This document shows positions 1 through 31,202 of a stretch of 31,202 bases of DNA, one piece after another (the stretch's first letter is position 1; each line of letters opens with the position of its first letter). The notes under the pieces are model-generated. The model was not told where the DNA came from and ran no database searches. It saw nothing but the letters and a program-made list of their open reading frames with translations. Both the position numbers and the translations under genes were made by a program. Origin of the DNA: Utricularia gibba (Eukaryota > Plantae > Magnoliophyta); NCBI GenBank assembly GCA_002189035.1, contig NEEC01000331.1:1-31202 (forward strand). The letters are read 5' to 3'.

Positions 1-545
1 AAAATTCGGTGTGCCACGAGGGAAAGGACGTGGCACCGACGCGCGCGCCGCTTTGACAACCCGATGGCGTGCCGCATAAAGAAAAAAAAAGAAAAAGAAA
101 AAAAAAAAAAAAATGCAACACGAGGACTCCAGGGGGTTAGAAAATTCGGTGGCCACGAGGGCAAGAGGGGTTTTCACGTGGAACGCGCGCGCCGCTGCAG
201 CGCACGTTGAGATGGCGTGCCGCATAAAGAAGAAAAAAAAAAAAAAAAAAAAAAGGGATTTCCAGGGGGTTAGAAAATTCGGTGTGCAAGGGCAAGAGGG
301 GTGATGCGGCCCAGCACGTTGACAACCGATGACAAAAGAAAAAAAAAAAGGGATGCAACACGAGGACTTCCCAGGGGGTTAGAAAATTGGTGTGCCACGA
401 GGGCAAGAGGGGTTTTCACGTGGCCGACGCGCGCGCCGCTGCACGCACGTTGACAACCCGATGGCGTGCGCATAAAGAAGAAAAAGAAAAAGAAAAAAAA
501 AAAAGGGATGCAACACGAGGACTTCCAGGGGTTAGAAAATTCGGT

Positions 546-580
546 GTGCCACGAGGGCAAGAGGGGTTTTCACGTGGCAC
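546..580. repeat. Inverted repeat within the monomer, GTGCCACG-N19-CGTGGCAC (representative copy)
   Basis: Perfect 8-bp arms at 546-553 and 573-580. The stem extends to TCGGTG(TG)CCACG / CGTGGCACCGA with a 2-nt bulge. Confidence 0.85.
571..578. promoter_or_regulatory. G-box/ABRE-like motif CACGTGGC in each monomer (motif match only, function untested)
   Basis: CACGTGGC at 571-578 and at the equivalent position in most monomers. It matches the plant bZIP/bHLH G-box and ABRE core ACGTGGC. Confidence 0.3.
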
Positions 581-1084
581 CGACGCGCGCGCCGCTGCAC
601 GCACGTTGACAACCGATGGCGTGCCGCATAAAGAAAAAAAGAAAAAGAAAAAAAAAAAAAAAGGGATGCAACACGAGGACTTCCAGGGGGTTAGAAAATT
701 CGGTGTGCCACGAGGGCAAGAGGGGTTTTCACGTGGAGACGCGCGCGCCGCTGCACGCACGTTGACAACCCGATGGCGTGCCGCATAAAGAAGAAAAAGA
801 AAAAGAAAAAAAAAAAAGGATGCAACACGAGGACTTCCCAGGGGGTTAGAAATTCGGTGTGCCACGAGGGCAAGAGGGGTTTTCACGTGCACCGACGCGC
901 GCGCCGCTGCACGCACGTTGACAACCCGATGGCGTGCGCATAAAGAAAAAAAAGAAAAAAAAAAAAAAAAAAAGGGATGCAACACGAGGACTTCCCAGGG
1001 GTTAGAAAATTCGGTGTGCCACGAGGCAAGAGGGGTTTTCACGTGGACGCGCGCGCCGCTGCACGCACCGATGGCGTGCCGCAT

Positions 1085-1116
1085 AAAGAAGAAAAAGAAA
1101 AAGAAAAAAAAAAAAA
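1085..1116 (-). terminator. Oligo(dT) RNA polymerase III terminator of the 5S unit, representative copy; repeated in each monomer
   Basis: The minus strand reads T13-CTTTTTCTTTTTCTTCTTT immediately after the 5S 3' end, the canonical position of the 5S Pol III terminator. Confidence 0.85.
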
Positions 1117-1146
1117 GGGATGCAACACGAGGACTTCCCAGGGGGT
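1117..1146 (-). pseudogene. 5S_rRNA: 5S rRNA gene 3' fragment (about +90 to +119), representative copy; present in nearly every monomer
   Basis: The minus strand reads ACCCCCTGGGAAGTCCTCGTGTTGCATCCC. This matches from memory the conserved 3' end of land-plant nuclear 5S rRNA (...GGATGGGTGACC(T/C)CCTGGGAAGTCCTCGTGTTGCATCCC). An oligo-T run follows directly. Upstream the match breaks (GAATTTTCTA instead of GGATGGGTG). Confidence 0.92.
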
Positions 1147-7100: not shown

Positions 7101-10100
7101 AAAAAAAAGAAAAAAAAAAAAAGGATGCAGGGGTTAGAAAATTCGGTGTGCACGAGGGCAAGAGGGTTTTCACGTGGGAATTGACAACCCGATGGCGTGC
7201 CGCATAAAGAAGAAAAAGAAAAAAAAAAAAGGGATGCAACACGAGGACTTCCCAGGGGGTTAGAAAATTCGGTGTGCCACGAGGGCAAGAGGGGTTTTCA
7301 CGTGGAACCGACGCGCGCGCGCCGCTGCACGCACGTTGACACCGATGGCGTGCCGCATAAAGAAGAAAAAGAAAAAGAAAAAAAAAAAAGGGATGCAACA
7401 CGAGGACTTCCCAGGGGTTAGAAAATTCGGTGTGCCACGAGGGCAAGAGGGGTTTCACGTGGCACCGACGCGCGCCGCGCGCTGCACGCACGTTGACAAC
7501 CCGATGGCGTGCCGCATAAAGAAAAAAAAGAAAAGAAAAAAAAAAAAAAGGGATGCAACACGAGGACTTCCCAGGGGGTTAGAAAATTCGGTGTGCCACG
7601 AGGGCAAGAGGGGTTTTCACGTGGCCGACGCGCGCCGCTGCACGCACGTTGACAACCCGATGGCGTGCCGCATAAAAAGAAAAAGAAAAAGAAAAAAAAA
7701 GGGATGCAACACGAGGACTTCCCAGGGGTTTAGAAAATTCGGTGTGCCACGAGGGCAAGAGGGGTTTTCACGTGGCACCGACGCGCGCGCCGCTGCACGC
7801 ACGTTGACAACCCGATGGCGTGCCGCATAAAGAAGAAAAAGAAAAAAAAAAAAAAAAAAAAAAGGGATGCAACACGAGGACTTCCCAGGGGGTTAGAAAA
7901 TTCGGTGTGCCACGAGGGCAAGAGGGGTTTTCACGTGGCACCGACGCGCGCGCCGCTGCACGCACGTTGACAACCCGATGGCGTGCCGCATAAAGAAGAA
8001 AAAAAAAAGAAAAAAAAAAAAGGGATGCAACACGAGGACTTCCCAGGGGGTTAGAAATTCGGTGTGCCACGAGGGCAAGAGGGGTTTTCACGTGGCACCG
8101 ACGCGCGCGCCGCTGCACGCACGTTGACAACCGATGGCGTGCCGCATAAAGAAGAAAAAGAAAAAGAAAAAAAAAAAAAAGGGATGCAACACGAGGACTT
8201 CCCAGGGGTTAGAAAATTCGGTGTGCCACGAGGCAAGAGGGGTTTTCACGTGGCACCGACGCGCGCGCCGCTGCACGTGACAACCCGATGGCGTGCCGCA
8301 TAAAGAAGAAAAAGAAAAAGAAAAAAAAAAAAAGGGATGCAACACGAGGACTTCCCAGGGGTTAGAAAATTCGGTGTGCCACGAGGGCAAGAGGGGTTTT
8401 CACGTGGCACGACATGCGACAACAACCCGATGGCGTGCCGCATAAAGAAAAAAAGAAAAAAGAAAAAAAAAAAAAAAGGGATGCAACACGAGGACTTCCC
8501 AGGGGGTTAGAAAATTCGGTGTGCCACGAGGGCAAGAGGGGTTTTCACGTGGCACCGACGCGCGCGCCGCTGCACGCACGTTGACAACCCGATGGCGTGC
8601 CGCATAAAGAAGAAAAAGAAAAAGAAAAAAAAAAAAAAGGGATGCAACACGAGGACTTCCCAGGGGGTTAGAAAATTCGGTGTGCCACGAGGGCAAGAGG
8701 GGGTTTTCACGTGGCACCGACGCGCGCGCCGCTGCACGCACGTTGACAACCCGATGGCGTGCCGCATAAAGAAGAAAAAGAAAAAGAAAAAAAAAAAAAA
8801 GGGATGCAACACGAGGACTTCCCAGGGGGTTAGAAATTCGGTGCCACGAGGCAAGAGGGGTTTTCACGTGTTTGGGTGCCGCATAAAGAAAAAAAGAAAA
8901 GAAAAAAAAAAAAGGGATGCGGACTTCCAGCGGTGTGCCACGAGGGCAAGGGGTTTCACGTGGAACCGACGCGCGCGCCGCTGCACGCACGTTGACAACC
9001 CGATGGCGTGCCGCATAAAGAAGAAAAAGAAAAGAAAAAAAAAAAAAAGGGATGCAACACGAGGACTTCCCAGGGTTAGAAAATTCGGTGTGCCACGAGG
9101 GCAAGAGGGGTTTTCACGTGGCCGACGCGCGCGCCGCTGCACGCACGTTGACAACCGATGGCGTGCCGCATAAAGAAGAAAAAGAAAAAGAAAAAAAAAA
9201 AAGGGATGCAACACGAGGACTTCCCAGGGGTTAGAAAATTCGGTGTGCCACGAGGGCAAGAGGGGTTTTCACGTGGCACCGACGCGCGCGCCGCTGCACA
9301 CGCACGTTGACAACCCGATGGCGTGCCGCATAAGAAGAAAAAAAAAAAGAAAAAAAAAAAAAGGGATGCAACACGAGGACTTCCCAGGGGTTAGAAAATT
9401 CGGTGCCACGAGGGCAAGAGGGGTTTTCACGTGGCGACGCGCGCGCCGCTGCACGCACGTTGACAACCCGATGGCGTGCGCATAAAGAAGAAAAAGAAAA
9501 AGAAAAAAAAAAAAAAGGGATGCAACACGAGGACTTCCAGGGGTTAGAAAATTCGGTGTGCCACGAGGGCAAGAGGGGTTTTCACGTGGCACCGACGCGC
9601 GCGCGCTGCACGCACGTTGACAACCCGATGGCGTGCCGCATAAAGAAAAAAGAAAAAGAAAAAAAAAAAAAAAGGGGATGCAACACGAGGACTTCCCAGG
9701 GGGTTAGAAAATTCGGTGTGCCACGAGGGCAAGAGGGGTTTTCACGTGGCGACGCGCGCGCCGCTGCACGCACGTTGACAACCCGATGGCGTGCCGCATA
9801 AAGAAGAAAAAGAAAAGAAAAAAAAAAAAAGGGATGCAACACGCTTCCAGGGGGTTAGAAAATTCGGTGTGCCACGAGGGCAAGAGGGTTTTCACGTGTG
9901 CAAGTTGACAACCCGATGGCGTGCCATAAAGAAAAAAGAAAAAGAAAAAAAAAAAAAAAGGGATGCAACACGAGGACTTCCCAGGGGGTTAGAAAATTCG
10001 GTGTGCACGAGGGCAAGAGGGGTTTTCACGTGGGACGCGCGCGCCGCTGCACGCACGTTGACAACCGATGGCGTGCCGCATAAAGAAGAAAAAGAAAAAG

Positions 10101-15930: not shown

Positions 15931-16010
15931 CCCCCACGAAAAAAAAAAAAAAAAAAAAAAAACGTGGTAACGGGGCAAAAAACAAGCTGAAACGAAAGAA
16001 TTTTTCCCAC
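15931..16010. other. Non-monomer interruption of ~80 bp with an A24 run (origin unclear; possibly low-quality sequence)
   Basis: CCCCCACG-A24-CGTGGTAACGGGGCAAAAAACAAGCTGAAACGAAAGAATTTTTCCCAC replaces most of one monomer, including its 5S fragment. Confidence 0.45.
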
Positions 16011-18756
16011 ACGAGGGCAAGACGTGGCACCGACGCGCGCCGCTGCACGCACGTTGACAACCGATGGCGTGCCGCATAAAAAAAAAAGAAAAAGAAAAAA
16101 AAAAAAAAGGGATGCAACACGAGGACTTCCCAGGGGTTAGAAAATTCGGTGTGCCACGAGGGCAAGAGGGGTTTTCACGTGGACCGACGCGCGCGCCGCT
16201 GCACGCACGTTGACAACCCGATGGCGTGCCGCATAAAGAAGAAAAAGAAAAAGAAAAAAAAAAAAAGGGATGCAACACGAGGACTTCCCAGGGGGTTAGA
16301 AAATTCGGTGTGCACGAGGGCAAGAGGGGTTTTCACGTGGCACCGACGCGCGCGCCGCTGCACGCACGTTGACAACCCGATGGCGTGCCGCATAAAGAAA
16401 AAAAAAAAAAGAAAAAAAAAAAAAAAGGGATGCAACACGAGGACTTCCCAGGGGGTTAGAAAATTCGGTGTGCCACGAGGGCAAGAGGGGTTTTCACGTG
16501 GACCGACGCGCGCGCGCTGCACGCACGTTGACAACCCGATGGCGTGCCGCATAAAGAAGAAAAAGAAAAAGAAAAAAAAAAAAAGGGATGCAACACGTGG
16601 ACTTCCAGGGGGTTAGAAAATTCGGTGTGCCACGAGGGCAAGAGGGGTTTTCACGTGGCACCGACGCGCGCGCCGCTGCACGCACGTTGACAACCGATGG
16701 CGTGCCGCATAAAGAAAAAAAGAAAAAGAAAAAAAAAAAAAAGGGATGCAACACGAGGACTTCCCAGGGGTTAGAAAATTCGGTGTGCCACGAGGGCAAG
16801 AGGGGTTTTCACGTGGCACCGACGCGCGCGCGCTGCTGCACGTTGACAACCCGATGGCGTGCCGCATAAAGAAGAAAAAGAAAAAAAAAAAAAAAAAAAG
16901 GGATGCAACACGAGGACTTCCCAGGGGGTTAGAAAATTCGGTGTGCCACGAGGGCAAGAGGGGTTTTCACGTGGCACGACGCGCGCGCGCCGCTGCACGC
17001 ACGTTGACAACCGATGGCGTGCCGCATAAAGAAGAAAAAAAAAGAAAAAAAAAAAAAGGGATGCAACACGAGGACTTCCAGGGGTTAGAAATTCGGTGTG
17101 CCACGAGGGCAAGAGGGGTTTTCACGTGGCACCGACGCGCGCGCCGCTGCATTGACAACCGATGGCGTGCCGCATAAAGAAAAAAAAGAAAAAAAAAAAA
17201 AAAAAAAGGGATGCAACACGAGGACTTCCAGGGGGTTAGAAAATTCGGTGTGCCACGAGGGCAAGAGGGGTTTTCACGTTGCCCGGCCCGCGACGCACGT
17301 TGAGATGGCGTGCCGCATAAAGAAGAAAAAGAAAAAGAAAAAAAAAAAAAAAGGGATGCAACACGAGGACTTCCCAGGGGGTTAGAAATTCGGTGTGCCA
17401 CGAGGGCAAGAGGGGTTTTCACGTGGCCCGACGCGCGCGCCGCTGCACGCACGTTGAAACCCGATGGCGTGCCGCATAAAGAAAAAAAAAAAGAAAAAAA
17501 AAAAAAAGGGATGCAACACGAGGACTTCCAGGGGGTTAGAAATTCGGTGTGCACGAGGGCAAGAGGGGTTTTCACGGCCGACGCGCGCCGCTGCACGCAC
17601 GTTGACAACCCGATGGCGTGCCGCATAAAGAAGAAAAAGAAAAAGAAAAAAAAAAAAGGGATGCAACACGAGGACTTCCCAGGGGTTAGAAAATTCGGTG
17701 TGCCACGAGGGCAAGAGGGGTTTTCACGTGGCACCGACGCGCGCGCGCCGCTGCACGCACGTTGACAACCCGATGGCGTGCCGCATAAAGAAGAAAAAGA
17801 AAAAAAAAAAAAAAAAAAGGGATGCAACACGAGGACTTCCCAGGGGTTAGAAAATTCGGTGTGCCACGAGGGCAAGAGGGGTTTTCACGTGCACGACGCG
17901 CGCCGCTGCACGCACGTGGCCGATGGCGTGCCGCATAAAGAAGAAAAAGAAAAAGAAAAAAAAAAAAAGGGATGCAACACGTGGACTTCCAGGGGGTTAG
18001 AAAATTCGGTGTGCCACGAGGGCAAGAGGGGTTTTCACGTGGCACCGACGCGCGCGCCGCTGCACGCACGTGGATGGCGTGCCGCATAAAGAAAAAAAGA
18101 AAAAGAAAAAAAAAAAAAGGGATGCAACACGAGGACTTCCCAGGGGTTAGAAAATTCGGTGTGCCACGAGGGCAAGAGGGTTTCACGTGGCACCGACGCG
18201 CGCGCCGCTGCAGCGCACGTTGACAACCCGATGGCGTGCCGCATAAAGAAGAAAAAGAAAAAGAAAAAAAAAAAAGGGATGCAACACGAGGACTTCCCAG
18301 GGGTTAGAAAATTCGGTGTGCCACGAGGGCAAGAGGGGTTTTCACGTGGCACCGACGCGCGCGCCGCTGCACGCACGTTGACAACCGATGGCGTGCCGCA
18401 TAAAGAAAAAAAAGAAAAAGAAAAAAAAAAAAAAAGGGATGCAACACGTGGACTTCCCAGGGGGTTAGAAAATTCGGTGTGCACGAGGGCAAGAGGGGTT
18501 TTCACGTGGCACCGACGCGCGCGCCGCTGCACGCACGTTGACAACCCGATGGCGTGCCGCATAAAGAAGAAAAGAAAAAAAGAAAAAAAAAAAAGGGATG
18601 CAACACGTGGACTTCCCAGGGGGTTAGAAAATTCGGTGTGCCACGAGGGCAAGAGGGGTTTTCACGTGGCACCGACGCGCGCGCCGCTGCACGCACGTTG
18701 ACAACCCGATGGCGTGCCGCATAAAGAAGAAAAAGAAAAAGAAAAAAAAAAAAAAA

Positions 18757-19017
18757 GGGATGCAACACGAGGACTTCCCAGGGGGTTAGGGGGAGTTATG
18801 GGAATTAATGACGCAACCGATCGCGCGACCAAGTGAGGAAGCGACGCTTTGATCCGCAAGCACCCGCATCGTTTCGAAGCTCCTTTGGGCTCGCTTGTGG
18901 AGCACGAAACGATGCTGCGTCCCTCGAAACGCAGCCGCACGGGGGACGACGCAGCAGCGGCGGCGCGTGACGAAGACCGCGATCAGCGAAGATGCGAACG
19001 GATGGGCATGTGGGAGG
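18757..19017 (-). pseudogene. 5S_rRNA: Long unit 1: degraded or mis-assembled near-full 5S rDNA unit (gene remnant ~18757-18818 plus extra spacer)
   Basis: A ~228-bp insert (18790-19017) lies exactly at the monomer junction. GGAGTTATGGGAATTAATG resembles the 5S reverse complement GGAGTTCTGATGGGATCCGGTGCATTAGTG, and CGCAACCGAT resembles the gene start. Spacer blocks are shared with the other three inserts. Confidence 0.6.
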
Positions 19018-19147
19018 TAGAAAATTCGGTGTGCCACGAGGGCAAGAGGGGTTTTCACGTGGCACCGACGCGCGCGCCGCTGCACGCACGTTGACAACCC
19101 GATGGCGTGCCGCATAAAGAAAAAAAGAAAAGAAAAAAAAAAAAAAA

Positions 19148-19372
19148 GGGATGCAACACGAGGACTTCCCAGGGGGTGGCCAATGGGATGGGGTGCACTG
19201 GCGCACCCGATTGGTGCGCGCGATGAGGCGTCAACAGACGCTTTGATCCGCGTGAAGCACCGCGCATCGTTTCGAAGGAGCCCGACGCAGGGGCTTAGCA
19301 CGAAACGATGCTGCGTTGACGAAGAGATGTTCGCGATCAGCGAAGATGCCACGAGACGGGATGGCAAGAGAC
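19148..19372 (-). pseudogene. 5S_rRNA: Long unit 2: degraded or mis-assembled near-full 5S rDNA unit (gene remnant 19148-19208 plus extra spacer)
   Basis: Insert 19178-19372 contains ATGGGATGGGGTGCACTGG, similar to the 5S reverse complement ATGGGATCCGGTGCATTAG. It also contains CGCACCC (19202-19208), the reverse complement of the 5S start GGGTGCG, with C at -1 on the minus strand. Confidence 0.7.
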
Positions 19373-20441
19373 TAGAAAATTCGGTGTGCCACGAGGGCAA
19401 GAGGGGTTTTCACGTGGCACCGACGCGCGCGCCGCTGCACGCACGTTGACAACCCGATGGCGTGCCGCATAAAGAAGAAAAAGAAAAAGAAAAAAAAAAA
19501 GGGATGCAACACGTGGACTTCCCAGGGTTTAGAAAATTCGGTGTGCCACGAGGGAAAGAGGGTTTTCACGTGCACGACGCGCGCGCCGCTGCAGCACGTT
19601 GACAACCCGATGGCGTGCCGCATAAAGAAGAAAAAGAAAAAAAAAAAAAAAAGGGATGCAACACGTGGACTTCCAGGGGGTTAGAAAATTCGGTGTGCCA
19701 CGAGGGCAAGAGGGGTTTTCACGTGGCACCGACGCGCGCGCCGCTGCACGCACGTTGACAACCCGATGGCGTGCCGCATAAAGAAGAAAAAGAAAAAGAA
19801 AAAAAAAAAGGGATGCAACACGTGGACTTCCAGGGGTTAGAAAATTCGGTGTGCCACGAGGGCAAGAGGGGTTTTCACGTGGCACGACGCGCGCGCCGCT
19901 GCACGCACGTTGACAACCCGATGGCGTGCCGCATAAAGAAGAAAAAGAAAAAGAAAAAAAAAAAAAAAGGGATGCAACACGAGGACTTCCCAGGGGTTTA
20001 GAAAATTCGGTGTGCCACGAGGGCAAGAGGGTTTTCACGTGGCACCGACGCGCGCGCCGCTGCACGCACGTTGACAACCCGATGGCGTGCGCATAAAGAA
20101 GAAAAAGAAAAAGAAAAAAAAAAAAGGGATGCAACACGAGGACTTCCCAGGGGGTTAGAAAATTCGGTGTGCCACGAGGGCAAGAGGGGTTTTCACGTGG
20201 CACCGACGCGCGCGCCGCTGCACGCACGTTGACAACCCGATGGCGTGCCGCATAAAGAAGAAAAAGAAAAAGAAAAAAAAAAAGGGATGCAAACGTGGAC
20301 TTCCCAGGGGGTTAGAAAATTCGGTGTGCCGAGGGCAAGAGGGGTTTTCACGTGGCACCGACGCGCGCGCCGCTGCACGCACGTTGACAACCCGATGGCG
20401 TGCCGCATAAAGAGAAAAAGAAAAAAAAAAAAAAAAAAAAA

Positions 20442-20693
20442 GGGATGCAACACGAGGACTTCCCAGGGGGTCAGCCCAAAGCAAACTTCGGTGCCGGTGC
20501 ACTGCGTTGCGCGCGACAACATGCGTCGAAGCATAATTTCAGACCGGACGCGTGAAGCACCGCGCAAAGCGAGACGGGGCTCGCTTGGTGGAGCAAGAAC
20601 GAAAACGCAGCCGCACGGGGGGACGACGCAGCAGCGGCGCGGCGTGACGAAAGATGTTCGCGATCAGCGAGGATGGGCATTGGCAACTTGAGA
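20442..20693 (-). pseudogene. 5S_rRNA: Long unit 3: degraded or mis-assembled near-full 5S rDNA unit (gene remnant ~20442-20503 plus extra spacer)
   Basis: The 5S match extends past the usual junction (GGGGGTCA). It continues with GCCCAAAGCA, AACTTCGG and CCGGTGCACT, which are collinear pieces of the 5S reverse complement (GCCCAAGCACGCTTAACTTCGGAG...ATCCGGTGCA). Confidence 0.72.
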
Positions 20694-20824
20694 AGAAAAT
20701 TCGGTGTGCCACGAGGGCAAGAGGGGTTTTCACGTGGCACCGACGCGCGCGCCGCTGCACGCACGTTGACAACCCGATGGCGTGCCGCATAAAGAAGAAA
20801 AAGAAAAAAAAAAAAAAAAAAAAA

Positions 20825-20993
20825 GGGATGCAACACGAGGACTTCCCAGGGGGTGTAAGCTTTTGGGAATTAACGCACCCGATTGGTGTTGACATGCGTC
20901 GTGCAAAGCGGCGGCGTTAAAGAACGGGGGCAACGAAACGAAAAAGCCGCACGATGACGAAGAAGAATGAAATGGAGACGGGAAAACTTGAGA
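20825..20993 (-). pseudogene. 5S_rRNA: Long unit 4: degraded or mis-assembled near-full 5S rDNA unit (gene remnant 20825-20880 plus extra spacer)
   Basis: Insert 20855-20993 contains CGCACCCGATTGGTG (5S start plus upstream flank, identical to long unit 2). It ends in AACTTGAGAAGAAA as in long unit 3. Confidence 0.62.
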
Positions 20994-23900
20994 AGAAATT
21001 CGGTGTGCCACGAGGGCAAGAGGGGTTTTCACGTGGCACCGACGCGCGCGCCGCTGCACGCACGTTGACAACCCGATGGCGTGCCGCATAAAGAAGAAAA
21101 AAAAAAGAAAAAAAAAAAAAGGGATGCAACACGAGGACTTCCCAGGGGGTTAGAAAATTCGGTGTGCCACGAGGGCAAGAGGGGTTTTCACGTGGCACGA
21201 CGCGCGCGCCGCTGCACGCACGTTGACAACCCGATGGCGTGCCGCATAAAGAAAAAAGAAAAAGAAAAAAAAAAAAGGGATGCAACACGTGGACTTCCCA
21301 GGGGGTTAGAAAATTCGGTGTGCCGAGGGCAAGAGGGGTTTTCACGTGGCACCGACGCGCGCGCCGCTGCACGCACGTTGACAACCCGATGGCGTGCCGC
21401 ATAAAGAAGAAAAAGAAAAAAAAAAAAAAAAAAAGGGATGCAACACGTGGACTTCCCAGGGTTAGAAAATTCGGTGTGCCACGAGGGCAAGAGGGGTTTT
21501 CACGTGGCACCGACGCGCGCGCCGCTGCACGCACGTTGCCCGATGGCGTGCCGCATAAAGAAGAAAAAGAAAAAGAAAAAAAAAAAAGGGATGCAACACG
21601 TGGACTTCCCAGGGGGTTAGAAAATTCGGTGTGCCACGAGGGCAAGAGGGGTTTTCACGTGGCACGACGCGCGCGCCGCTGCACGCACGTTGACAACCCG
21701 ATGGCGTGCCGCATAAAGAAGAAAAAAGAAAAAAAAAAAAAAAAGGGATGCAACACGAGGACTTCCCAGGGGGTTAGAAAATTCGGTGTGCCACGAGGGC
21801 AAGAGGGGTTTTCACGTGCACTGCACGCACGTTGACAACCCGATGGCGTGCCGCATAAAGAAGAAAAAGAAAAAAAAAAAAAAAGGGATGCAACACGTGG
21901 ACTTCCCAGGGGGTTAGAAAATTCGGTTGCCACGAGGGCAGAGGGGTTTTCACGTGGCAACCGCTGCACGCACGTTGACAACCCGATGGCGTGCCGCATA
22001 AAGAAGAAAAGAAAAAAGAAAAAAAAAAAAGGGATGCAACACGGGACTTCCAGGGGGTTAGAAAATTCGGTGTGCCACGAGGGCAAGAGGGGTTTCACGT
22101 GGCACCGACGCGCGCGCCGCTGCACGCACGTTGACAACCCGATGGCGTGCCGCATAAAGAAGAAAAAGAAAAAGAAAAAAAAAAAAGGGATGCAACACGT
22201 GGACTTCCCAGGGGGTTAGAAAATTCGGTGTGCAACGAGGGCAAGAGGGGTTTCACGTGGCACCGACGCGCGCGCTGCACGCACGTTGACAACCCGATGG
22301 CGTGCCGCATAAAGAAAAAAAAAAAAGAAAAAAAAAAAAAAAGGGATGCAACACGAGGACTTCCCAGGGGTTAGAAAATTCGGTGTGCACGAGGGCAAGA
22401 GGGTTTTCACGTTGCACGCACGTTGACAACCCGATGGCGTGCCGCATAAAGAAGAAAAAGAAAAAGAAAAAAAAAAAAAGGGATGCAACACGTGGACTTC
22501 CCAGGGGGTTAGAAAACGAGGGCAAGAGGGGTTTTCACGTGGCACACGCGCGCGCCGCTGCACCGTTGACAACCGATGGCGTGCCGCATAAAGAAGAAAA
22601 AGAAAAGAAAAAAAAAAAAAGGGATGCAACACGTGGACTTCCCAGGGGGTTAGAAAATTCGGTGTGCCACGAGGGCAAGAGGGGTTTTCACGTGGCACGA
22701 CGCGCGCGCCGCTGCACGCACGTTGACAACCCGATGGCGTGCCGCATAAAGAAGAAAAAGAAAAAGAAAAAAAAAAAGGGATGCAACACGTGGACTTCCA
22801 GGGGGTTAGAAAATTCGGTGTGCCACGAGGGCAAGAGGGGTTTTCACGTGGCACCGACGCGCGCGCCGCTGCACGCACGTTGACAACCCGATGGCGTGCC
22901 GCATAAAGAAGAAAAAGAAAAAGAAAAAAAAAAAAGGGATGCAACAAATTCCCAGGGGTTAGAAATTCGGTGTGCAACGAGGCAAGAGGGGTTTTCACGT
23001 GCACCGACGCGCGCGCCGCTGCACGCACGTTGACAACCGAATAAAGAAGAAAAAGAAAAAGAAAAAAAAAAAAAAGGATGCAACACGAGGACTTCCAGGG
23101 GGTTAGAAAATTCGGTGTGCCACGAGGGCAAGAGGGGTTTTCACGTGGCACGACGCGCGCGCCGCTGCACGCACGTTGACAACCCGATGGCGTGCCGCAT
23201 AAAGAAGAAAAGAAAAAGAAAAAAAAAAAAAGGGATGCAACACGAGGACTTCCCAGGGGGTTAGAAAATTCGGTGTGCACGAGGGCAAGAGGGGTTTTCA
23301 CGTGGCACCGACGCGCGCGCCGCTGCACGCACGTTGACAACCCGATGGCGTCCGCATAAAGAAGAAAAAGAAAAAGAAAAAAAAAAAAAAAGGGATGCAA
23401 CACGTGGACTTCCCAGGGGGTTAGAAAATTCGGTGTGCCACGAGGGCAAGAGGGTTTTCACGTGGCACGACGCGCGCGCCGCTGCACGCACGTTGACAAC
23501 CGATGGCGTGCCGCATAAAGAAGAAAAAGAAAAAGAAAAAAAAAAAAGGGATGCAGGACTTCCCAGAGAAAATTCGGTGTGCCACGAGGGCAAGAGGGGT
23601 TTTCACGTGGCACCGACGCGCGCGCCGCTGCACGCACGTTGACAACCCGATGGCGTGCCGCATAAAGAAGAAAAAAAAAAGAAAAAAAAAAAGGAATGCA
23701 ACACGAAGGGGGTTAGAAAATTCGGTGTGCCACGAGGGCAAGAGGGTTTCACGTGACGCGCGCGCCGCTGCACGCACGTTGACAACCCGATGCGTGCCGC
23801 ATAAAGAAGAAAAGAAAAAGAAAAAAAAAAAAGGGATGCAACACGTGGACTTCCAGGGGGTTAGAAATTCGGTGTGCAACGAGGGCAAGAGGGGTTTTCA

Positions 23901-26900
23901 CGTGGCACGACGCGCGCGCCGCTGCACGCACGTTGACAACCCGATGGCGTGCCGCATAAAGAAGAAAAAGAAAAAGAAAAAAAAAAAGGGATGCAACACG
24001 GACTTCCCAGGGGTTAGAAAATTCGGTGTGCCACGAGGGCAAGAGGGGTTTTCACGTGGACCGACGCGCGCGCGCCACGCACGTTGACAACCCGATGGCG
24101 TGCCGCATAAAGAAAAAGAAAAAGAAAAAAAAAAAAAAGGGATGCAACACGAGGACTTCCAGGGGTTAGAAAATTCGGTGTGCCACGAGGCAAGAGGGGT
24201 TTACGTGGTTGTGCCGCATAAAGAAGAAAAAGAAAAAGAAAAAAAAAAAAAAGGGATGCAACACTTCCCAGGGGGTTAGAAAATTCGGTGTGCCACGAGG
24301 GCAAGAGGGGTTTTCACGTGGCACCGCGCGCGCGCCGCTGCACGCACGTTGACAACCCGATGGCGTGCCGCATAAAGAAGAAAAAGAAAAAGAAAAAAAA
24401 AAAAGGGATGCAACACGTGGACTTCCCAGGGGGTTAGAAAATTCGGTGTGCCACGAGGGCAAGAGGGGTTTCACGTGCCGACGCGCGCGCGCTGCACGCA
24501 CGTTGACAACCCGATGGCGTGCCGCATAAAGAAGAAAAAGAAAAAGAAAAAAAAAAAAAGGGATGCAACACGTGGACTTCCCAGGGGGTTAGAAATTCGG
24601 TGTGCCACGAGGGCAAGAGGGGTTTTCACGTGGACCGACGCCGCGCCGCTGCACGCACGTTGACAACCCGATGGCGTGCCGCATAAAGAAGAAAAAGAAA
24701 AAAGAAAAAAAAAAAAGGGATGCAACACGAGGACTTCCCAGGGGTTAGAAAATTCGGTGTGCCACGAGGGCAAGAGGGTTTTCACGTGGCACCGACGCGC
24801 GCGCCGCTGCCGCACGTTGACAACCGATGGCGTGCCGCATAAAGAAAAAAAAGAAAAAGAAAAAAAAAAAAAGGGATGCAACACGAGGACTTCCAGGGGG
24901 TTAGAAAATTCGGTGTGCCACGAGGGCAAGAGGGGTTTTCACGTGGCACCGAGCGCGCGCCGCTGCACGCACGTTGACAACCCGATGGCGTGCCGCATAA
25001 AGAAGAAAAAGAAAAAGAAAAAAAAAAAAGGGATGCAACACGAGGACTTCCCAGGGGGTTAGAAAATTCGGTGTGCAACGAGGGCAAGAGGGGTTTTCAC
25101 GTGGCACCGACGCGCGCGCCGCTGCACGCACGTTGACAACCCGATGGCGTGCCGCATAAAGAAGAAAAAGAAAAGAAAAAAAAAAAAAAGGGATGCAACA
25201 CGAGGACTTCCCAGGGGGTTAGAAAATTCGGTGTGCCACGAGGGCAAGAGGGGTTTTCACGTGGCACCGACGCGCGCGCCGCTGCACGCACGTTGACAAC
25301 CCGATGGCGTGCCGCATAAAGAAGAAAAAGAAAAAAAAAAAAAAAAAAAGGGATGCAACACGAGACTTCCCAGGGGTTAGAAAATTCGGTGTGCCACGAG
25401 GGCAAGAGGGTTTTCACGTGGCACCGACGCGCGCGCCGCTGCACGCACGTTGACAACCCGATGGCGTGCCGCATAAAGAAGAAAAAGAAAAAGAAAAAAA
25501 AAAAAAGGGATGCAACGAGGACTTCCCAGGGGTTAGAAAATTCGGTGTGCCACGAGGGCAAGAGGGGTTTTCACGTGGCACCGACGCGCGCGCGCTGCAC
25601 GCACGTTGACACCCGATGGCGTGCCGCATAAAGAAGAAAAAGAAAAAAAAAAAAAAAAAAAGGGATGCAACACGAGGACTTCCCAGGGGGTTAGAAAATT
25701 CGTGTGCCACGAGGGCAAGAGGGGTTTTCACGTGGCACCGACGCGCGCGCCGCTGCACCACGTTGACAACCCGATGGCGTGCCGCAAAAGAAAAAAGAAA
25801 AAGAAAAAAAAAAAAAGGGATGCAACACGAGGACTTCCCAGGGGGTTAGAAAATTCGGTGTGCCACGAGGGCAAGAGGGGTTTTCACGTGGCACCGACGC
25901 GCGCGCCGCTGCACGCACGTTGACAACCCGATGGCGTGCCGCATAAAGAAAAAAAAAGAAAAAGAAAAAAAAAAAGGGGATGCAACACGAGGACTTCCCA
26001 GGGGGTTAGAAAATTCGGTGTGCCACGAGGGCAAGAGGGGTTTTCACGTGGCACCGACGCGCGCGCCGCTGCACGCACGTTGACAACCCGATGGCGTGCC
26101 GCATAAAGAAGAAAAAGAAAAAGAAAAAAAAAAAAAGGGATGCAACACGAGGACTTTCCCAGGGGGTTAGAAAATTCGGTGTGCCACGAGGGCAAGAGGG
26201 GTTTTCACGTGGCACCGACGCGCGCGCCGCTGCACGCACGTTGACAACCCGATGGCGTGCCGCATAAAGAAGAAAAAGAAAAAGAAAAAAAAAAAAAGGG
26301 ATGCAACACGAGGACTTCCCAGGGGGTTAGAAAATTCGGTGTGCCACGAGGGCAAGAGGGGTTTTCACGTGGCACCGACGCGCGCGCCGCTGCACGCACG
26401 TTGACAACCCGATGGCGTGCCGCATAAAGAAAAAAAGAAAAAAAAAAAAAAGGGATGCAACACGTGGACTTCCAGGGGGTTAGAAAATTCGGTGCCACGA
26501 GGGCAAGAGGGTTTTCACGTGGCACCGACGCGCGCGCCGCTGCACGCACGTTGACACCCGATGGCGTGCCGCATAAAGAAGAAAAAGAAAAAGAAAAAAA
26601 AAAAAAGGATGCAACACGAGGACTTCCCAGGGGTTAGAAAATTCGGTGTGCCACGAGGGCAAGAGGGGTTTTCACGTGGCACCGACGCGCGCGCCGCTGC
26701 ACGCACGTTGACAACCCGATGGCGTGCCGCATAAAGAAAAAAAGAAAAAAAAAAAAGGGATGCAACACGAGGACTTCCAGGGGTTAGAAAATTCGGTGTG
26801 CCACGGGGCAAGAGGGTTTTCACTGGCACGACGCGCGTGCACGCACGTTGACAACCCGATGGCGTGCCGCATAAAGAAGAAAAAGAAAAAGAAAAAAAAA

Positions 26901-29900
26901 AAGGGATGCAACACGGGACTTCCCAGGGGGTTAGAAAATTCGGTGTGCCACGAGGGGAGGGGTTTCACGTGGCACCGACGCGCGCGCCGCTGCACGCACG
27001 TTGACAACCCGATGGCGTGCCGCATAAAGAAGAAAAAGAAAAAGAAAAAAAAAAAGGGATGCAACACGAGGACTTCCCAGGGGTTAGAAAATTCGGTGTG
27101 CCACGAGGCAAGAGGGGTTTTCACGTGGCACCGACGCGCGCGCCGCTGCACGCACGTTGACAACCGATGGCGTGCCGCATAAAGAAGAAAAGAAAAAGAA
27201 AAAAAAAAAAGGGATGCAACGAGGACTTCCCAGGGGGTTAGAAAATTCGGTGTGCCACGAGGGGGGGTTTTCACGTGGCACCGACGCGCGCGCCGCTGCA
27301 CGCACGTTGACAACCATGGCGTGCCGCATAAAGAAAAGAAAAAGAAAAAAAAAAAAAAAGGGATGCAACACGAGGACTTCCCAGGGGGTTAGAAAATTCG
27401 GTGTGCCACGAGGGCAAGAGGGGTTTTCACGTGCCGACGCGCGCGCCGCTGCACGCACGTTGACAACCCGATGGCGTGCCGCATAAAGAAGAAAAAGAAA
27501 AAGAAAAAAAAAAAAAAGGGATGCAACACGAGGACTTCCCAGGGGGTTAGAAAATTCGGTGTGCCACGAGGGCAAGAGGGGTTTTCACGTGGCACCGACG
27601 CGCGCGCCGCTGCACGCACGTTGACAACCGATGGCGTGCCGCATAAAGAAGAAAAAGAAAAAAAAAAAAAAAAAAAGGGATGCAACACGAGGACTTCCCA
27701 GGGGGTTAGAAAATTCGGTGTGCCAGGGGCAAAGGGGTTTTCACGTGACCGACGCGCGCGCCGCTGCACCACGTTGACAACCCGATGGCGTGCCGCATAA
27801 AGAAGAAAAAGAAAAAAAAAAAAAAAAGGGATGCAACACGAGGACTTCCCAGGGGTTAGAAATTCGGTGTGCTTTTCACGTGGCACCGACGCGCGCGCCG
27901 CTGCACGCACGTTGACAACCCGATGGCGTGCCGCATAAAGAAGAAAAAGAAAAAGAAAAAAAAAAAAGGGATGCAACACGGACTTCCCAGGGGGTTAGAA
28001 AATTCGGTGTGCCACGAGGGCAAGAGGGGTTTTCACGTGGCACCGACGCGCGCGCCGCTGCACGCACGTTGACAACCCGATGGCGTGCCGCATAAAGAAG
28101 AAAAGAAAAAGAAAAAAAAAAAGGGATGCAACACGAGGACTTCCCAGGGGGTTAGAAAATTCGGTGTGCCACGAGGGCAAGAGGGGTTTTCACGTGGCAC
28201 CGACGCGCGCGCCGCTGCACGCACGTTGACAACCCGATGGCGTGCCGCATAAAGAAGAAAAAGAAAAAAAAAAAAAAAAAGGGATGCAACACTTCCCAGG
28301 GGGTTAGAAAATTCGGTGTGCCACGAGGGCAAGAGGGTTTTCACGTGGCACCGACGCGCGCGCCGCTGCACGCACGTTGACAACCCGATGGCGTGCCGCA
28401 TAAAGAAGAAAAGAAAAAGAAAAAAAAAAAAGGGATGCAACACGAGGACTTCCCAGGGGTTTAGAAAATTCGGTGCCACGAGGGCAAGAGGGGTTTTCAC
28501 GTGGCACCGACGCGCGCGCCGCTGCACGCACGTTGACAACCCGATGGCGTGCCGCATAAAGAAGAAAAAGAAAAGAAAAAAAAAAAAGGGATGCAACACG
28601 TGGACTTCCCAGGGGTTAGAAAATTCGGTGTGCCACGAGGGCAAGAGGGGTTTTCACGTGGCACCGACGCGCGCGCCGCTGCACGCACGTTGTGGCGTGC
28701 CGCATAAAGAAGAAAAAGAAAAAGAAAAAAAAAAAAAAGGGATGCAACACGAGGACTTCCCAGGGTTAGAAAATTCGGTGTGCCACGAGGGCAAGAGGGG
28801 TTTTCACGTGGACCGACGCGCGCGCCGCTGCACGCACGTTGACAACCCGATGGCGTGCCGCATAAAGAAGAAAAAGAAAAAGAAAAAAAAAGGGATGCAA
28901 CACGAGGACTTCCCAGGGGGTTAGAAAATTCGGTGTGCCACGAGGGCAAGAGGGTTTTGGCACCGACGCGCGCGCCGCTGCACGCACGTTGACAACCCGA
29001 TGGCGTGCCGCATAAAGAAGAAAAAGAAAAAAAAAAAAAAAAAGGGATGCAACACGACTTCGGGGGTTAGAAAATTCGGTGTGCCACGAGGCAAGGGGTT
29101 TTCACGTGGCACCGACGCGCGCGCCGCTGCACGCACGTTGACAACCCGATGGTGCCGCATAAGAAAAAAAAAGAAAAAAAAAAAAAAGGGATGCAACACG
29201 AGGACTTCCCAGGGGGTTAGAAAATTCGGTGCCACGAGGGCAAGAGGGCACGTGTGCACGCACGTTGAGGCGTGTAAAGAAAAAGAAAAAGAAAAAAAAA
29301 AAAAAAGGGATGCAACACGAGGAACGGTGTGCACGAGGGCAAGAGGGTTTTCACGTGGACGCGCGCGCCGCTGCACGCACGTTGACAACCGATGGCGTGC
29401 CGCATAAAGAAAAAAGAAAAAGAAAAAAAAAAAAAAGGGATGCAACACGAGGACTTCCAGGGGTTAGAAAATTCGGTGTGCCACGAGGGCAAGAGGGGTT
29501 TTCACGTGGCACCGACGCGCGCGCCGCTGCACGCACGTTGACAACCCGATGGCGTGCCGCATAAAGAAGAAAAAGAAAAAGAAAAAAAAAAAAAAAAGGG
29601 ATGCAACACGAGGACTTCCAGGGGGTTAGAAAATTCGGTGTGCCACGAGGGCAAGAGGGGTTTCACGTGGCACCGACGCGCGCGCCGCTGCACGCACGTT
29701 GACAACCCGATGGCGTGCCGCATAAAGAAGAAAAAGAAAAAGAAAAAAAAAAAAAAGGGATGCAACACGTGGACTTCCCAGGGGGTTAGAAAATTCGGTG
29801 TGCCACGAGGGCAAGAGGGGTTTTCACGTGGACCGACGCGCGCGCGCTGCACGCACGTTGACAACCCGATGGCGTGCCGCATAAAGAAGAAAAAGAAAAA

Positions 29901-31202
29901 GAAAAAAAAAAAAAGGGATGCAACACGAGGACTTCCCAGGGGGTTAGAAAATTCGGTGTGCCACGAGGGCAAGAGGGGTTTTCACGTGCTGCAACGTTGA
30001 CAACCCGATGGCGTGCCGCATAAAGAAGAAAAAGAAAAAGAAAAAAAAAAAAAAGGGGATGCAACACGAGGACTTCCAGGGGTTAGAAATTCGGTGTGCC
30101 ACGAGGGCAAGAGGGTTTCACGTGGCACCGACGCGCGCGCCGCTGCACGCACGTTGACAACCCGATGGCGTGCCGCATAAAGAAGAAAAAGAAAAGAAAA
30201 AAAAAAAAGGGATGCAACACGAGGACTTCCCAGGGGGTTAGAAAATTCGGTGTGCCACGAGGGCAAGAGGGGTTTTCACGTGGCATGCACGCACGTTGAC
30301 AACCCGATGGCGTGCCGCATAAAGAAGAAAAAGAAAAAGAAAAAAAAAAAAGGGATGCAACACGGGACTTCCCAGGGGTTAGAAAATTCGGTGGCCACGA
30401 GGGCAAGAGGGTTTTCACGTGGCACCGACGCGCGCGCCGCTGCACGCACGTTGACAACCGATGGCGTGCCGCATAAGAGAAGAAAAAGAAAAAAAAAAAA
30501 AAAAAAGGATGCAACACGAGGACTTCCCAGGGGTTAGAAAATTCGGTGTGCCACGAGGGCAAGAGGGGTTTTCACGTGGCACCGACCGCGCGCCGCTGCA
30601 CGCACGTTGACAACCCGATGGCGTGCCGCATAAAGAAGAAAAAAAAAAGAAAAAAAAAAAAAGGATGCAACACGAGGACTTCCCAGGGGGTTAGAAAATT
30701 CGGTGTGCCACGAGGCAAGAGGGGTTTTCACGTGGCACCGACGCGCGCGCCGCTGCACGCACGTTGACCCGATGGCGTGCGCATAAAGAAGAAAAGAAAA
30801 AGAAAAAAAAAAAAAGGATGCAACACGAGGACTTCCCAGGGGTTAGAAAATTCGGTGTGCCACGTTTTCGTGGCACCGACGCGCGCGCCGCTGCACGCAC
30901 GTTGACAACCCGATGGCGTGCCGCATAAAGAAAAAAGAAAAAGAAAAAAAAAAAAAGGGATGCAACACGAGGACTTCCCAGGGGGTTAGAAAATTCGGTG
31001 TGCCACGAGGGCAAGAGGGGTTTCACGTTGGCAACACACCGCACATTGACCCATGGGAGAAAAACGCACAACAAGACTTTGAGGCACACAGAGAAAATTC
31101 GGTGTGCCACGAGGGCAAGAGGGGTTTTCACGATTGCCCGATGGCGTGCCGCACGAACGGTGTGCAACGAGGCAAGGGGTGGGCACCGACGCGCGCGCCG
31201 CT

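What the first reader, a model, noticed from the sequence alone, without database searches (positions are those of the whole stretch)
1..31202. A satellite made of promoter-less 5S rDNA tails: 5S 3' end plus terminator plus proximal spacer, amplified ~200-fold
Seen: every monomer carries, on the - strand, about +90 to +119 of plant 5S rRNA, the oligo-T tract and ~95 bp of spacer, then rejoins at GAATTTTCTA|ACCCCC. Established: 5S genes are transcribed from an internal control region (A box, intermediate element, C box, roughly +50 to +90 in plants) bound by TFIIIA/TFIIIC. 5S-derived satellites are known, e.g. frog PcP190, fish 5SHindIII and the spacer-derived jumper repeat in Phaseolus. Inference: one deletion removed the 5' ~89 nt of the gene and the distal spacer, and this short unit then spread. 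The product is an array of Pol III terminators with no promoter. I do not recognise this monomer as a described family, so it may be a new lineage-specific 5S-derived satellite.
Basis: partly seen in the sequence, partly recalled or inferred. Interest (0 to 1): 0.8.

Follow-up and report, generated by a model that had tools for sequence, protein, structure and literature searches.

The report
Cut-down 5S rDNA repeat array
This plant contig is about 190 head-to-tail copies of a 160-base repeat left when one deletion removed most of a 5S ribosomal RNA gene and its far spacer; it is real and young, but this way of making satellite DNA is already known.

Summary
The window is one ~160-bp tandem array of about 190 units. 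The minus strand of each unit carries positions 90-119 of a plant 5S rRNA gene (29/30 to an Rfam-verified gene), the T-rich terminator tract and ~98 nt of spacer. About 176 units rejoin at the same junction.

Contigs of older public runs of the same organism contain that junction exactly, so it is not a long-read assembly artefact. The same runs hold a ~545-bp parent unit with the identical tail, terminator and near spacer. Four copies of this parent sit inside the array (18.8-21.0 kb). In the window they are riddled with deletions, and the short units also carry ~7% indel-dominated differences from their consensus. The "decay" is therefore most likely assembly noise.

One ~387-bp deletion explains the short unit. 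In one run the junction has about 0.3 times the depth of the parent-specific sequence. Junction words appear only in runs of two studies of this organism.

Verdict: a real, young, probably inert, promoter-less 5S rDNA derivative and a new member of a known kind (PcP190, 5SHindIII, PLsatB). This scan already reported the same 160-base repeat on another contig of this genome (s1-246631). Interest is low to moderate.

The parts
1..31202 (-). Whole window: one head-to-tail array of ~190 units of ~160 bp; both window ends lie inside the array
8639..8668 (-). Example unit: 5S rRNA gene tail, positions 90-119 (30 nt, 29/30 to a verified plant 5S gene)
   Evidence: primer match in PMC4542322
8606..8638 (-). 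Example unit: T-rich tract directly after the gene end (T13-15, then CT5 CT5 CTTCTTT); the native 5S Pol III terminator region
   Evidence: the same tract follows the tail in the long-unit contig X3 record 11
8508..8605 (-). Example unit: ~98 nt of near (proximal) 5S spacer ending in CCGAATTTTCTA
   Evidence: X1 record 2 matches 94 nt of this spacer exactly at 19018-19111
20132..20185 (-). Short-unit junction (spacer end joined to 5S position 90), matched without any difference by a 60-nt contig of another run (X1 record 3, depth 11.4)
18782..19021 (-). Long unit A insert: far spacer plus 5S-body remnants, with block deletions relative to the accurate contig
19173..19376 (-). Long unit B insert (same, with different blocks missing)
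20467..20696 (-). Long unit C insert; keeps the 5S words TGCACCGG, CCGAAGTT, TTTGGGC and TGACC in order
20850..20995 (-). Long unit D insert (the most reduced copy)
16586..29758 (-). Zone holding 20 of the 21 units with the one clear substitution variant (tail TCCTCG to TCCACG); local clustering as expected from unequal exchange
   Evidence: the variant is also seen in an X4 loose end
30982..31202 (-). Irregular units at the right end: spacer pieces without a 5S tail and a ~75-nt stretch unlike both the short and the long unit

Best explanation
The window is a block of a 5S rDNA-derived tandem repeat. The parent is a ~545-bp 5S-type unit of this plant: a 5S gene, a T-rich terminator, ~98 nt of near spacer and ~300 nt of far spacer. 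A single ~387-bp deletion, from just after ...GAATTTTCTA in the spacer of one unit to just before position 90 (ACCCCC...) of the next gene, left a 160-bp unit. That unit keeps only the last 30 nt of the gene, the terminator and the near spacer. The join is blunt or has at most 1 nt of shared sequence. The short unit then multiplied in place, most likely by unequal exchange within the array (inferred). The result is a nearly pure block of ~190 units that still encloses four parent-type units. Because box A, the intermediate element, nearly all of box C and the upstream TATA-like region are gone, the units should not be transcribed by Pol III. The array is most likely inert, CG-methylated repeat DNA (inferred). 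Most of the sequence variation in the window, including the apparent decay of the four long units, is most likely deletion-biased long-read consensus noise rather than biology.
For: Array and consensus. The tail equals 5S positions 90-119 at 29/30 (score 55 against a shuffle maximum of 27). The CCCCC variant is allowed by the Genlisea 5S primer in PMC4542322. Junction in other data: X1 record 3 covers 20132-20185 with 0 differences, X4 contigs span it, and junction-only words are held by X1, X2 and X5 fully and by X4 at half. Parent unit: X1 record 1 (446 nt, depth 38.1) runs from the 5S tail, through 157 nt missing from the window, into far-spacer pieces found separately in long units A and B, and on into the near spacer. 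X3 record 11 runs tail, T tract, near spacer, far spacer. X1 and X3 agree on the native boundary GAATTTTCTA^GTCTCAAG. Depths add up: shared spacer 46.4 against 38.1 (long-specific) plus 11.4 (junction). 5S-body words are collinear in the long units: sum 54 nt against a shuffle mean of 16 and a maximum of 47 in 3000 shuffles. Noise: 8 deletions, 2.9 insertions and 1.1 substitutions per monomer, uniform along the window. Long units A-C differ from the accurate sequence by 4-6 substitutions but many block deletions, different in each copy. Youth: almost no real substitutions and one clustered variant. Junction words are absent from X3, which holds the parent at depth 412-826, and from organisms B-G.
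Against: The 127 nt of the X1 contig that should contain the 5S body and its upstream region were never seen. A full-length gene there rests on the length budget and on fragments in the noisy long units. Rfam finds no 5S gene in any long unit. Scan notes describe a 535-bp satellite with a 'decayed' 5S gene in this genome, which could be the true parent instead of the active 5S rDNA. Copy number and array length come from one noisy contig; short reads cannot confirm 190 consecutive units, and the other contig with 82 units may be the same locus. Absence from X3 rests on 2 sampled words and on contigs, which by the tool's own warning do not prove absence. No transcription data were examined. The methylation hint rests on a handful of sites. 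Block deletions in short and long units could in part be real.
Confidence: 0.85

Rival explanations
1. Assembly artefact: the genome has only full-length 5S units, and the short unit was created by the assembler's consensus step, which collapses or deletes sequence in a tandem array.
For: The contig is very noisy and deletion-biased. The long units have lost blocks of up to 42 nt relative to accurate contigs.
Against: The exact junction stands in a contig of X1 with no difference over 54 nt, and in X4 contigs from a different study. About 176 units share the same breakpoint, which random consensus errors would not produce. X1 depths are additive (46.4 against 38.1 + 11.4).
Confidence: 0.03
2. 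The short unit is real, but its parent is not the active 5S rDNA. It descends from an already dead 5S-derived satellite (the ~535-bp repeat that scan notes report in this genome), so it is a second-generation satellite.
For: The long unit here is ~545 bp, close to 535 (notes). No note reports an intact 5S array in this genome. Rfam sees no gene in the long units.
Against: The tail is 29/30 to a working plant 5S gene and fits the family's primer sequence. All 5S-body words visible in the long units are exact matches to a working gene. This window shows that this assembly's noise alone can make a 5S gene invisible to Rfam, so the 'decay' reported elsewhere may be partly the same artefact.
Confidence: 0.15
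3. Retroposed or SINE-like origin: a 5S-related RNA with an A-rich tail was copied back into DNA and then tandemly amplified (the plus strand of each unit ends in a long A-rich tract).
For: The plus-strand A-rich tract of ~33 nt at the end of each unit.
Against: That tract is the complement of the native terminator and lies in the same place in the long unit (X3 record 11). The unit contains non-transcribed spacer. 5S-derived SINEs and Cassandra elements carry the 5' promoter part of the gene, which is absent here. All copies are tandem and in one orientation.
Confidence: 0.02
4. The array has a function of its own. Examples: a nucleosome-sized repeat recruited to a centromere or heterochromatin block (as reported for a 5S-derived array in switchgrass), or a stack of Pol III terminators or protein-binding sites acting as a barrier.
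For: The unit length of 160 bp is nucleosome-sized, the array is highly homogeneous, and there is a hint of CG methylation. Precedent: the reference to Yang et al. 2018 in PMC12692304.
Against: No positional, chromatin or expression data exist. Junction words were missing from a sample that holds the parent unit, which argues against an essential role. Homogeneity is expected from youth alone.
Confidence: 0.05

Closest known systems
5SHindIII-DNA satellite of the fish Hoplias malabaricus (Martins et al. 2006, as described in PMC2713275)
   Same: A tandem satellite whose unit is a truncated 5S gene segment plus spacer derived from the species' own 5S rDNA, and which is species-restricted.
   Different: Its unit is 360 bp with 95 bp of gene and 265 bp of spacer, and it has spread to many centromeres. 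Here the unit is 160 bp with only the last 30 nt of the gene, it still encloses parent units, and its location is unknown. The two are in different kingdoms and have no sequence relation beyond 5S.
PcP190 satellite of hyloid frogs (PMC11675491, PMC4201667)
   Same: A ~190-bp satellite descended from 5S rDNA.
   Different: PcP190 keeps a 120-bp region similar to the whole transcribed 5S sequence and is old and widespread across frog families. Here only the 3' quarter of the gene is kept, and the repeat looks young and confined to one species' samples.
PLsatB / cluster CL4 of Plantago lagopus (Kumke et al. 2016, as summarised in PMC6410184)
   Same: A plant (Lamiales) tandem repeat that arose by amplification of sequence including 5S rDNA fragments.
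   Different: That repeat has a 325-bp monomer, is specific to a B chromosome and is described only as having 'some similarity' to 5S. Here the breakpoints and the parent unit are resolved to the base.
The ~535-bp 5S-derived satellite and the 82-copy 160-base array noted by this scan on other contigs of the same genome (s1-227909, s1-246631)
   Same: Same genome. The 160-base array is by description the same repeat, and the 535-bp repeat is close in size to the ~545-bp long unit found here.
   Different: I could not read those contigs. Whether the 535-bp repeat equals the long unit here, and whether its 'decay' is real or assembly noise, remains open.

Membership tests
5S rDNA-derived satellite DNA (the kind that includes PcP190, 5SHindIII and PLsatB) | Long head-to-tail array of a short unit | tested here: met
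   ~190 units of ~160 bp in one orientation across 31 kb
5S rDNA-derived satellite DNA (the kind that includes PcP190, 5SHindIII and PLsatB) | Unit contains a segment homologous to the 5S rRNA gene | tested here: met
   29/30 to positions 90-119 of the Rfam-verified gene L001:365-483, score 55 against a shuffle maximum of 27; fits the Genlisea 5S primer (PMC4542322)
5S rDNA-derived satellite DNA (the kind that includes PcP190, 5SHindIII and PLsatB) | Rest of the unit is homologous to the same species' 5S spacer | tested here: met
   Contigs of X1 and X3 carry the same tail, T tract and near spacer continuing into the far spacer of a ~545-bp unit
5S rDNA-derived satellite DNA (the kind that includes PcP190, 5SHindIII and PLsatB) | Gene part is no longer a working 5S gene | tested here: met
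   Only positions 90-119 are left; there is no Rfam 5S match at any threshold tried
5S rDNA-derived satellite DNA (the kind that includes PcP190, 5SHindIII and PLsatB) | Amplified as its own array, distinct in location from the working 5S locus | not testable with these tools
   Both window ends lie inside the array. Four long units inside it (18.8-21.0 kb) suggest it is part of, or next to, a 5S-type array. FISH or a complete assembly is needed.
Functional 5S rRNA gene (Rfam RF00001) | Full-length ~120-nt gene with internal control region (box A, intermediate element, box C), scoring above Rfam's threshold | tested here: not met
   0 matches in the window at gathering score and at E up to 10 or 1, while the control loci L001 and L002 score 46-111 bits
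5S-derived SINE or Cassandra-type retroelement | Carries the 5' promoter-bearing part of 5S; dispersed copies or LTR context | tested here: not met
   Only the 3' tail is present; copies are strictly tandem; the A-rich tract is the complement of the native terminator
Sequence membership in PcP190, 5SHindIII or PLsatB themselves | Sequence similarity outside the 5S-derived part | not testable with these tools
   None of these sequences is available in the tools. Membership is unlikely, because the non-gene part here is this plant's own spacer.

The most novel reading that the evidence does not exclude
The 160-bp cut-down unit is a very recent, still polymorphic expansion: junction words are present in runs of two studies of the species but not seen in a third sample that holds the parent unit. 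It may be on its way to becoming a chromosome-structural repeat (heterochromatin block or centromere-associated), as reported for a 5S-derived array in switchgrass. [quoted passage not shown]
Probability: 0.06. Interest if true: 0.6.

Novelty: new member of a known kind. Interest (0 to 1): 0.3.

Why it matters
Satellites derived from 5S rDNA are known, so the class is not new. What this case offers is resolution. The parent unit, both breakpoints, the size of the single deletion (~387 bp) and the product (a nucleosome-sized 160-bp unit) can all be read. Parent units are still embedded in the array, and public samples seem to differ in whether they hold the junction. That makes it a convenient natural example for studying how a gene array sheds its gene and turns into satellite DNA. 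There is also a practical lesson for this genome. The contig carries about 7% deletion-biased noise, enough to hide 5S genes from Rfam and to make intact units look decayed. Other '5S decay' readings in this assembly should be checked against accurate reads.

Tried and rejected
(1) Rfam on the whole window at gathering score, and on 8400-9000 and 18600-21300 at permissive E-values, gave no 5S match. This does not test a 30-nt fragment, so I replaced it with a direct alignment to a verified gene.

(2) A metagenome scan with a 32-nt species-specific spacer pattern gave 0 hits. The allowed second scan, with the 25-nt 5S tail, gave two plant 5S loci that served as reference.

(3) Local alignment of the long units to the 5S body scored no better than shuffled controls under gap-tolerant scoring. 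A longest-common-subsequence test had no power, since any 40-mer scores about 34/40. Both were dropped in favour of a chain of exact words of 6 nt or more, which was significant.

(4) A look-up of earlier findings by sequence with a far-spacer piece was blank. Look-ups by words for an intact 5S array and for assembly noise in the 535-bp repeat turned up nothing of that kind.

(5) Paper searches for a Utricularia 5S satellite, for truncated 5S units in plants and for U. gibba centromere repeats found no description of this repeat. Cloix et al. 2002 on Arabidopsis 5S loci is not held, so my recollection of truncated 5S units there is unverified and was not used.

(6) ORFs of up to 395 aa are listed across the array. 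I rejected them as genes: they are run-throughs of a stop-poor repeat whose frame changes with the indel noise.

(7) A retroposition origin was considered because of the A-rich tract and rejected (see rivals).
Full report
WHAT IS IN THE WINDOW. Tandem Repeats Finder reports a single array of period 157-160 from 339 to 31033. Searching for a 19-nt anchor with up to 3 edits gives 184 hits on the plus strand and none on the minus strand, with spacings centred on 153-161 bp. A MAFFT consensus of 152 clean units is 160 nt long. Units differ from it almost only by indels: in a second count, 8.0 deletions, 2.9 insertions and 1.1 substitutions per unit, uniform along the window. The underlying array is therefore nearly homogeneous. 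I attribute the visible variation mostly to deletion-biased consensus noise, because X1's contigs match clean stretches of the window exactly and the long units differ from the accurate contigs almost only by deletions.

THE 5S CLAIM. Rfam finds nothing in the window at gathering score or at permissive E-values. This is not a fair test of a 30-nt fragment. I fetched real plant 5S genes by scanning metagenome contigs for the claimed tail and verified them with Rfam: L001:365-483 scores 111 bits over the full length. The minus strand of the consensus aligns to positions 90-119 of that gene at 29/30, with a local score of 55 against at most 27 for shuffles. The one mismatch gives ACCCCC in place of ACCTCC. 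The Genlisea (same family as the species named in the scan's notes) 5S reverse primer published in PMC4542322 has a degenerate base at this position and matches the monomer exactly, so the variant is native to the family. The tail is followed by a 33-nt T-rich tract and ~98 nt of spacer. About 176 units rejoin at GAATTTTCTA|ACCCCCTGGGAAG, with only homopolymer-length noise.

LONG UNITS AND THE PARENT. Only four units carry extra sequence between the spacer end and the tail: 145-239 nt, at 18782-19021, 19173-19376, 20467-20696 and 20850-20995. They are homologous to each other, but each lacks different pieces, while their flanks equal the array consensus.

Laying contigs of four public runs on 18560-21060 settled what they are. 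Run X1 (organism A, 2013) has a 446-nt contig at depth 38.1. It starts in the 5S tail, continues through 157 nt that the window lacks, then through pieces found separately in units B and A with 34 and 15 further letters between them, and ends in the near spacer with 23 more inserted letters. Run X3 (a plant metagenome, 2016) has a 184-nt contig running tail, T tract, near spacer, far spacer.

From these pieces I rebuilt 289 nt of the accurate long unit. Window units A, B and C match it with only 4-6 substitutions but many block deletions of 1-42 nt, different in each copy. The long units in the window are therefore deletion-riddled renderings of one ~545-bp unit, not independently decayed relics. 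Some real deletions cannot be excluded.

The native boundary reads GAATTTTCTA^GTCTCAAG in both X1 and X3. The unseen 127 nt of the X1 contig fit about 38 nt of upstream spacer (about 35 nt can be pieced from units B, C and D) plus the 89-nt 5S body.

A word-chain test shows that the stretch before the tail in the long units keeps exact 5S words in the right order. Examples are GCGATC at 5, TGCACCGG at 24, ATCCCAT at 32, AACTCC at 42, CCGAAGTT at 46 and TTTGGGC at 61. The sum is 54 nt against a shuffle mean of 16 and a maximum of 47 in 3000 shuffles. Two earlier statistics were uninformative.

IS THE SHORT UNIT REAL? Yes. X1 holds a 60-nt contig that covers 20132-20185, across the junction, with no difference, at depth 11.4. 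X4 (organism A, 2021), whose contigs show C-to-T changes as in bisulfite data, also spans the junction. In X1 the shared spacer contig has depth 46.4, close to the sum of the long-specific (38.1) and junction (11.4) depths. In that sample, short units are therefore about 0.3 times as frequent as long ones.

A 60-nt query in which every 31-mer spans the junction (2 sampled words) is held by X1, X2 and X5 (one study) and half by X4 (another study). It is not held by X3, which carries the long unit at depth 412-826. It is also not held by three 2019 DNA runs of organism A or by organisms B-G. X3 also showed no contig over the junction bins. These absences are weak evidence by the tools' own warnings, but they fit a young repeat that may be polymorphic.

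MECHANISM. Shown: the short unit equals the long unit minus one contiguous ~387-bp segment (far spacer plus 5S positions 1-89). The join is blunt or has at most one shared base.

Inferred: after this deletion, the unit multiplied in place by unequal exchange. Three things support this: the near-pure block, the embedded parent units, and the clustering of the single clear substitution variant (tail TCCTCG to TCCACG). That variant is in 21 of 152 units, 20 of them between 16.6 and 29.8 kb, and it is also visible in an X4 read end.

Also inferred: no Pol III transcription. Plant 5S genes need the internal promoter (boxes A, I, C) and a TATA-like motif at -28 (PMC5887818), and both are removed apart from a few bases of box C (positions from my knowledge of the Xenopus gene).

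A methylation hint comes from X4. All five listed C-to-T sites are CHH, while the CG sites lying between them (20165, 20175, 20196) are not listed as changed. This is consistent with CG methylation.

COMPARISON WITH WHAT IS KNOWN. rRNA gene spacers and 5S rDNA are recognised sources of satellites (review PMC12692304). Examples are the fish 5SHindIII repeat (360 bp: 95 bp gene-like plus 265 bp spacer-like; PMC2713275), frog PcP190 (PMC11675491), Plantago lagopus PLsatB (PMC6410184) and a switchgrass centromere repeat (reference only). The present repeat meets the features of this kind that could be tested, and it fails the tests for a working 5S gene and for a 5S-derived retroelement. I found no paper describing it. 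This scan has already reported the same 160-base repeat on another contig of the genome and reached the same reading (s1-246631). Another note on this very window proposed embedded ancestral units (s1-210031); I confirm them, with the correction that their apparent decay is most likely assembly noise.

OPEN POINTS. The organism name (Utricularia gibba) comes from scan notes. It fits a 2016 plant metagenome and a 2021 bisulfite run holding this DNA, and a 2021 methylome paper cited in PMC10663240, but I did not verify it. Whether the ~545-bp long unit is the active 5S rDNA or the 535-bp '5S-decayed' satellite noted elsewhere in the genome is unresolved. True copy number and chromosomal position are unknown.

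VERDICT. Interest is low to moderate.

Noticed in passing
window 18560-21060 (run X4): Run X4 behaves like bisulfite data. All five listed C-to-T sites are in CHH context (92-97% converted at four sites, 60% at 18663). CG sites lying between them (20165, 20175, 20196) are not listed as changed, which hints at CG methylation of the array with little CHH methylation.
   Followed up: partly
window 30982-31202: The right end of the window has irregular units: spacer pieces joined without a 5S tail, and a ~75-nt stretch after CCGAATTTTCT that resembles neither the short unit nor the far spacer of the long unit. It could be a real variant, the array edge or contig-end noise.
   Followed up: no
whole window: Assembly quality: about 7% deletion-biased error per unit, plus block deletions of 10-60 nt (unit lengths of 100-145 bp occur). 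This hides 5S genes from Rfam in the four long units, so other '5S decay' findings in this genome (the 535-bp satellite) may be affected in the same way.
   Followed up: partly
L002:978-4330 (metagenome contig Ga0041059_1007350): Another plant's 5S array in a metagenome contig. It has eight full-length 5S genes about 470-510 bp apart with Rfam scores from 94 down to 46 bits, plus one extra gene only 302 bp after its neighbour (2423 to 2725). This shows unit-length and sequence heterogeneity within one array.
   Followed up: no
window 16586-29758: A single real substitution subfamily (tail TCCTCG to TCCACG, at about 5S position 106) marks 21 of 152 units and clusters in the right half of the window, next to and around the long units.
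   Followed up: partly
one search run list: RNA runs from mouse-gut and food metagenomes, and DNA runs of other coded organisms, hold 7-18% of the monomer's sampled words but none of the junction words. Most likely they share only the conserved plant 5S tail plus T-run.
   Followed up: partly
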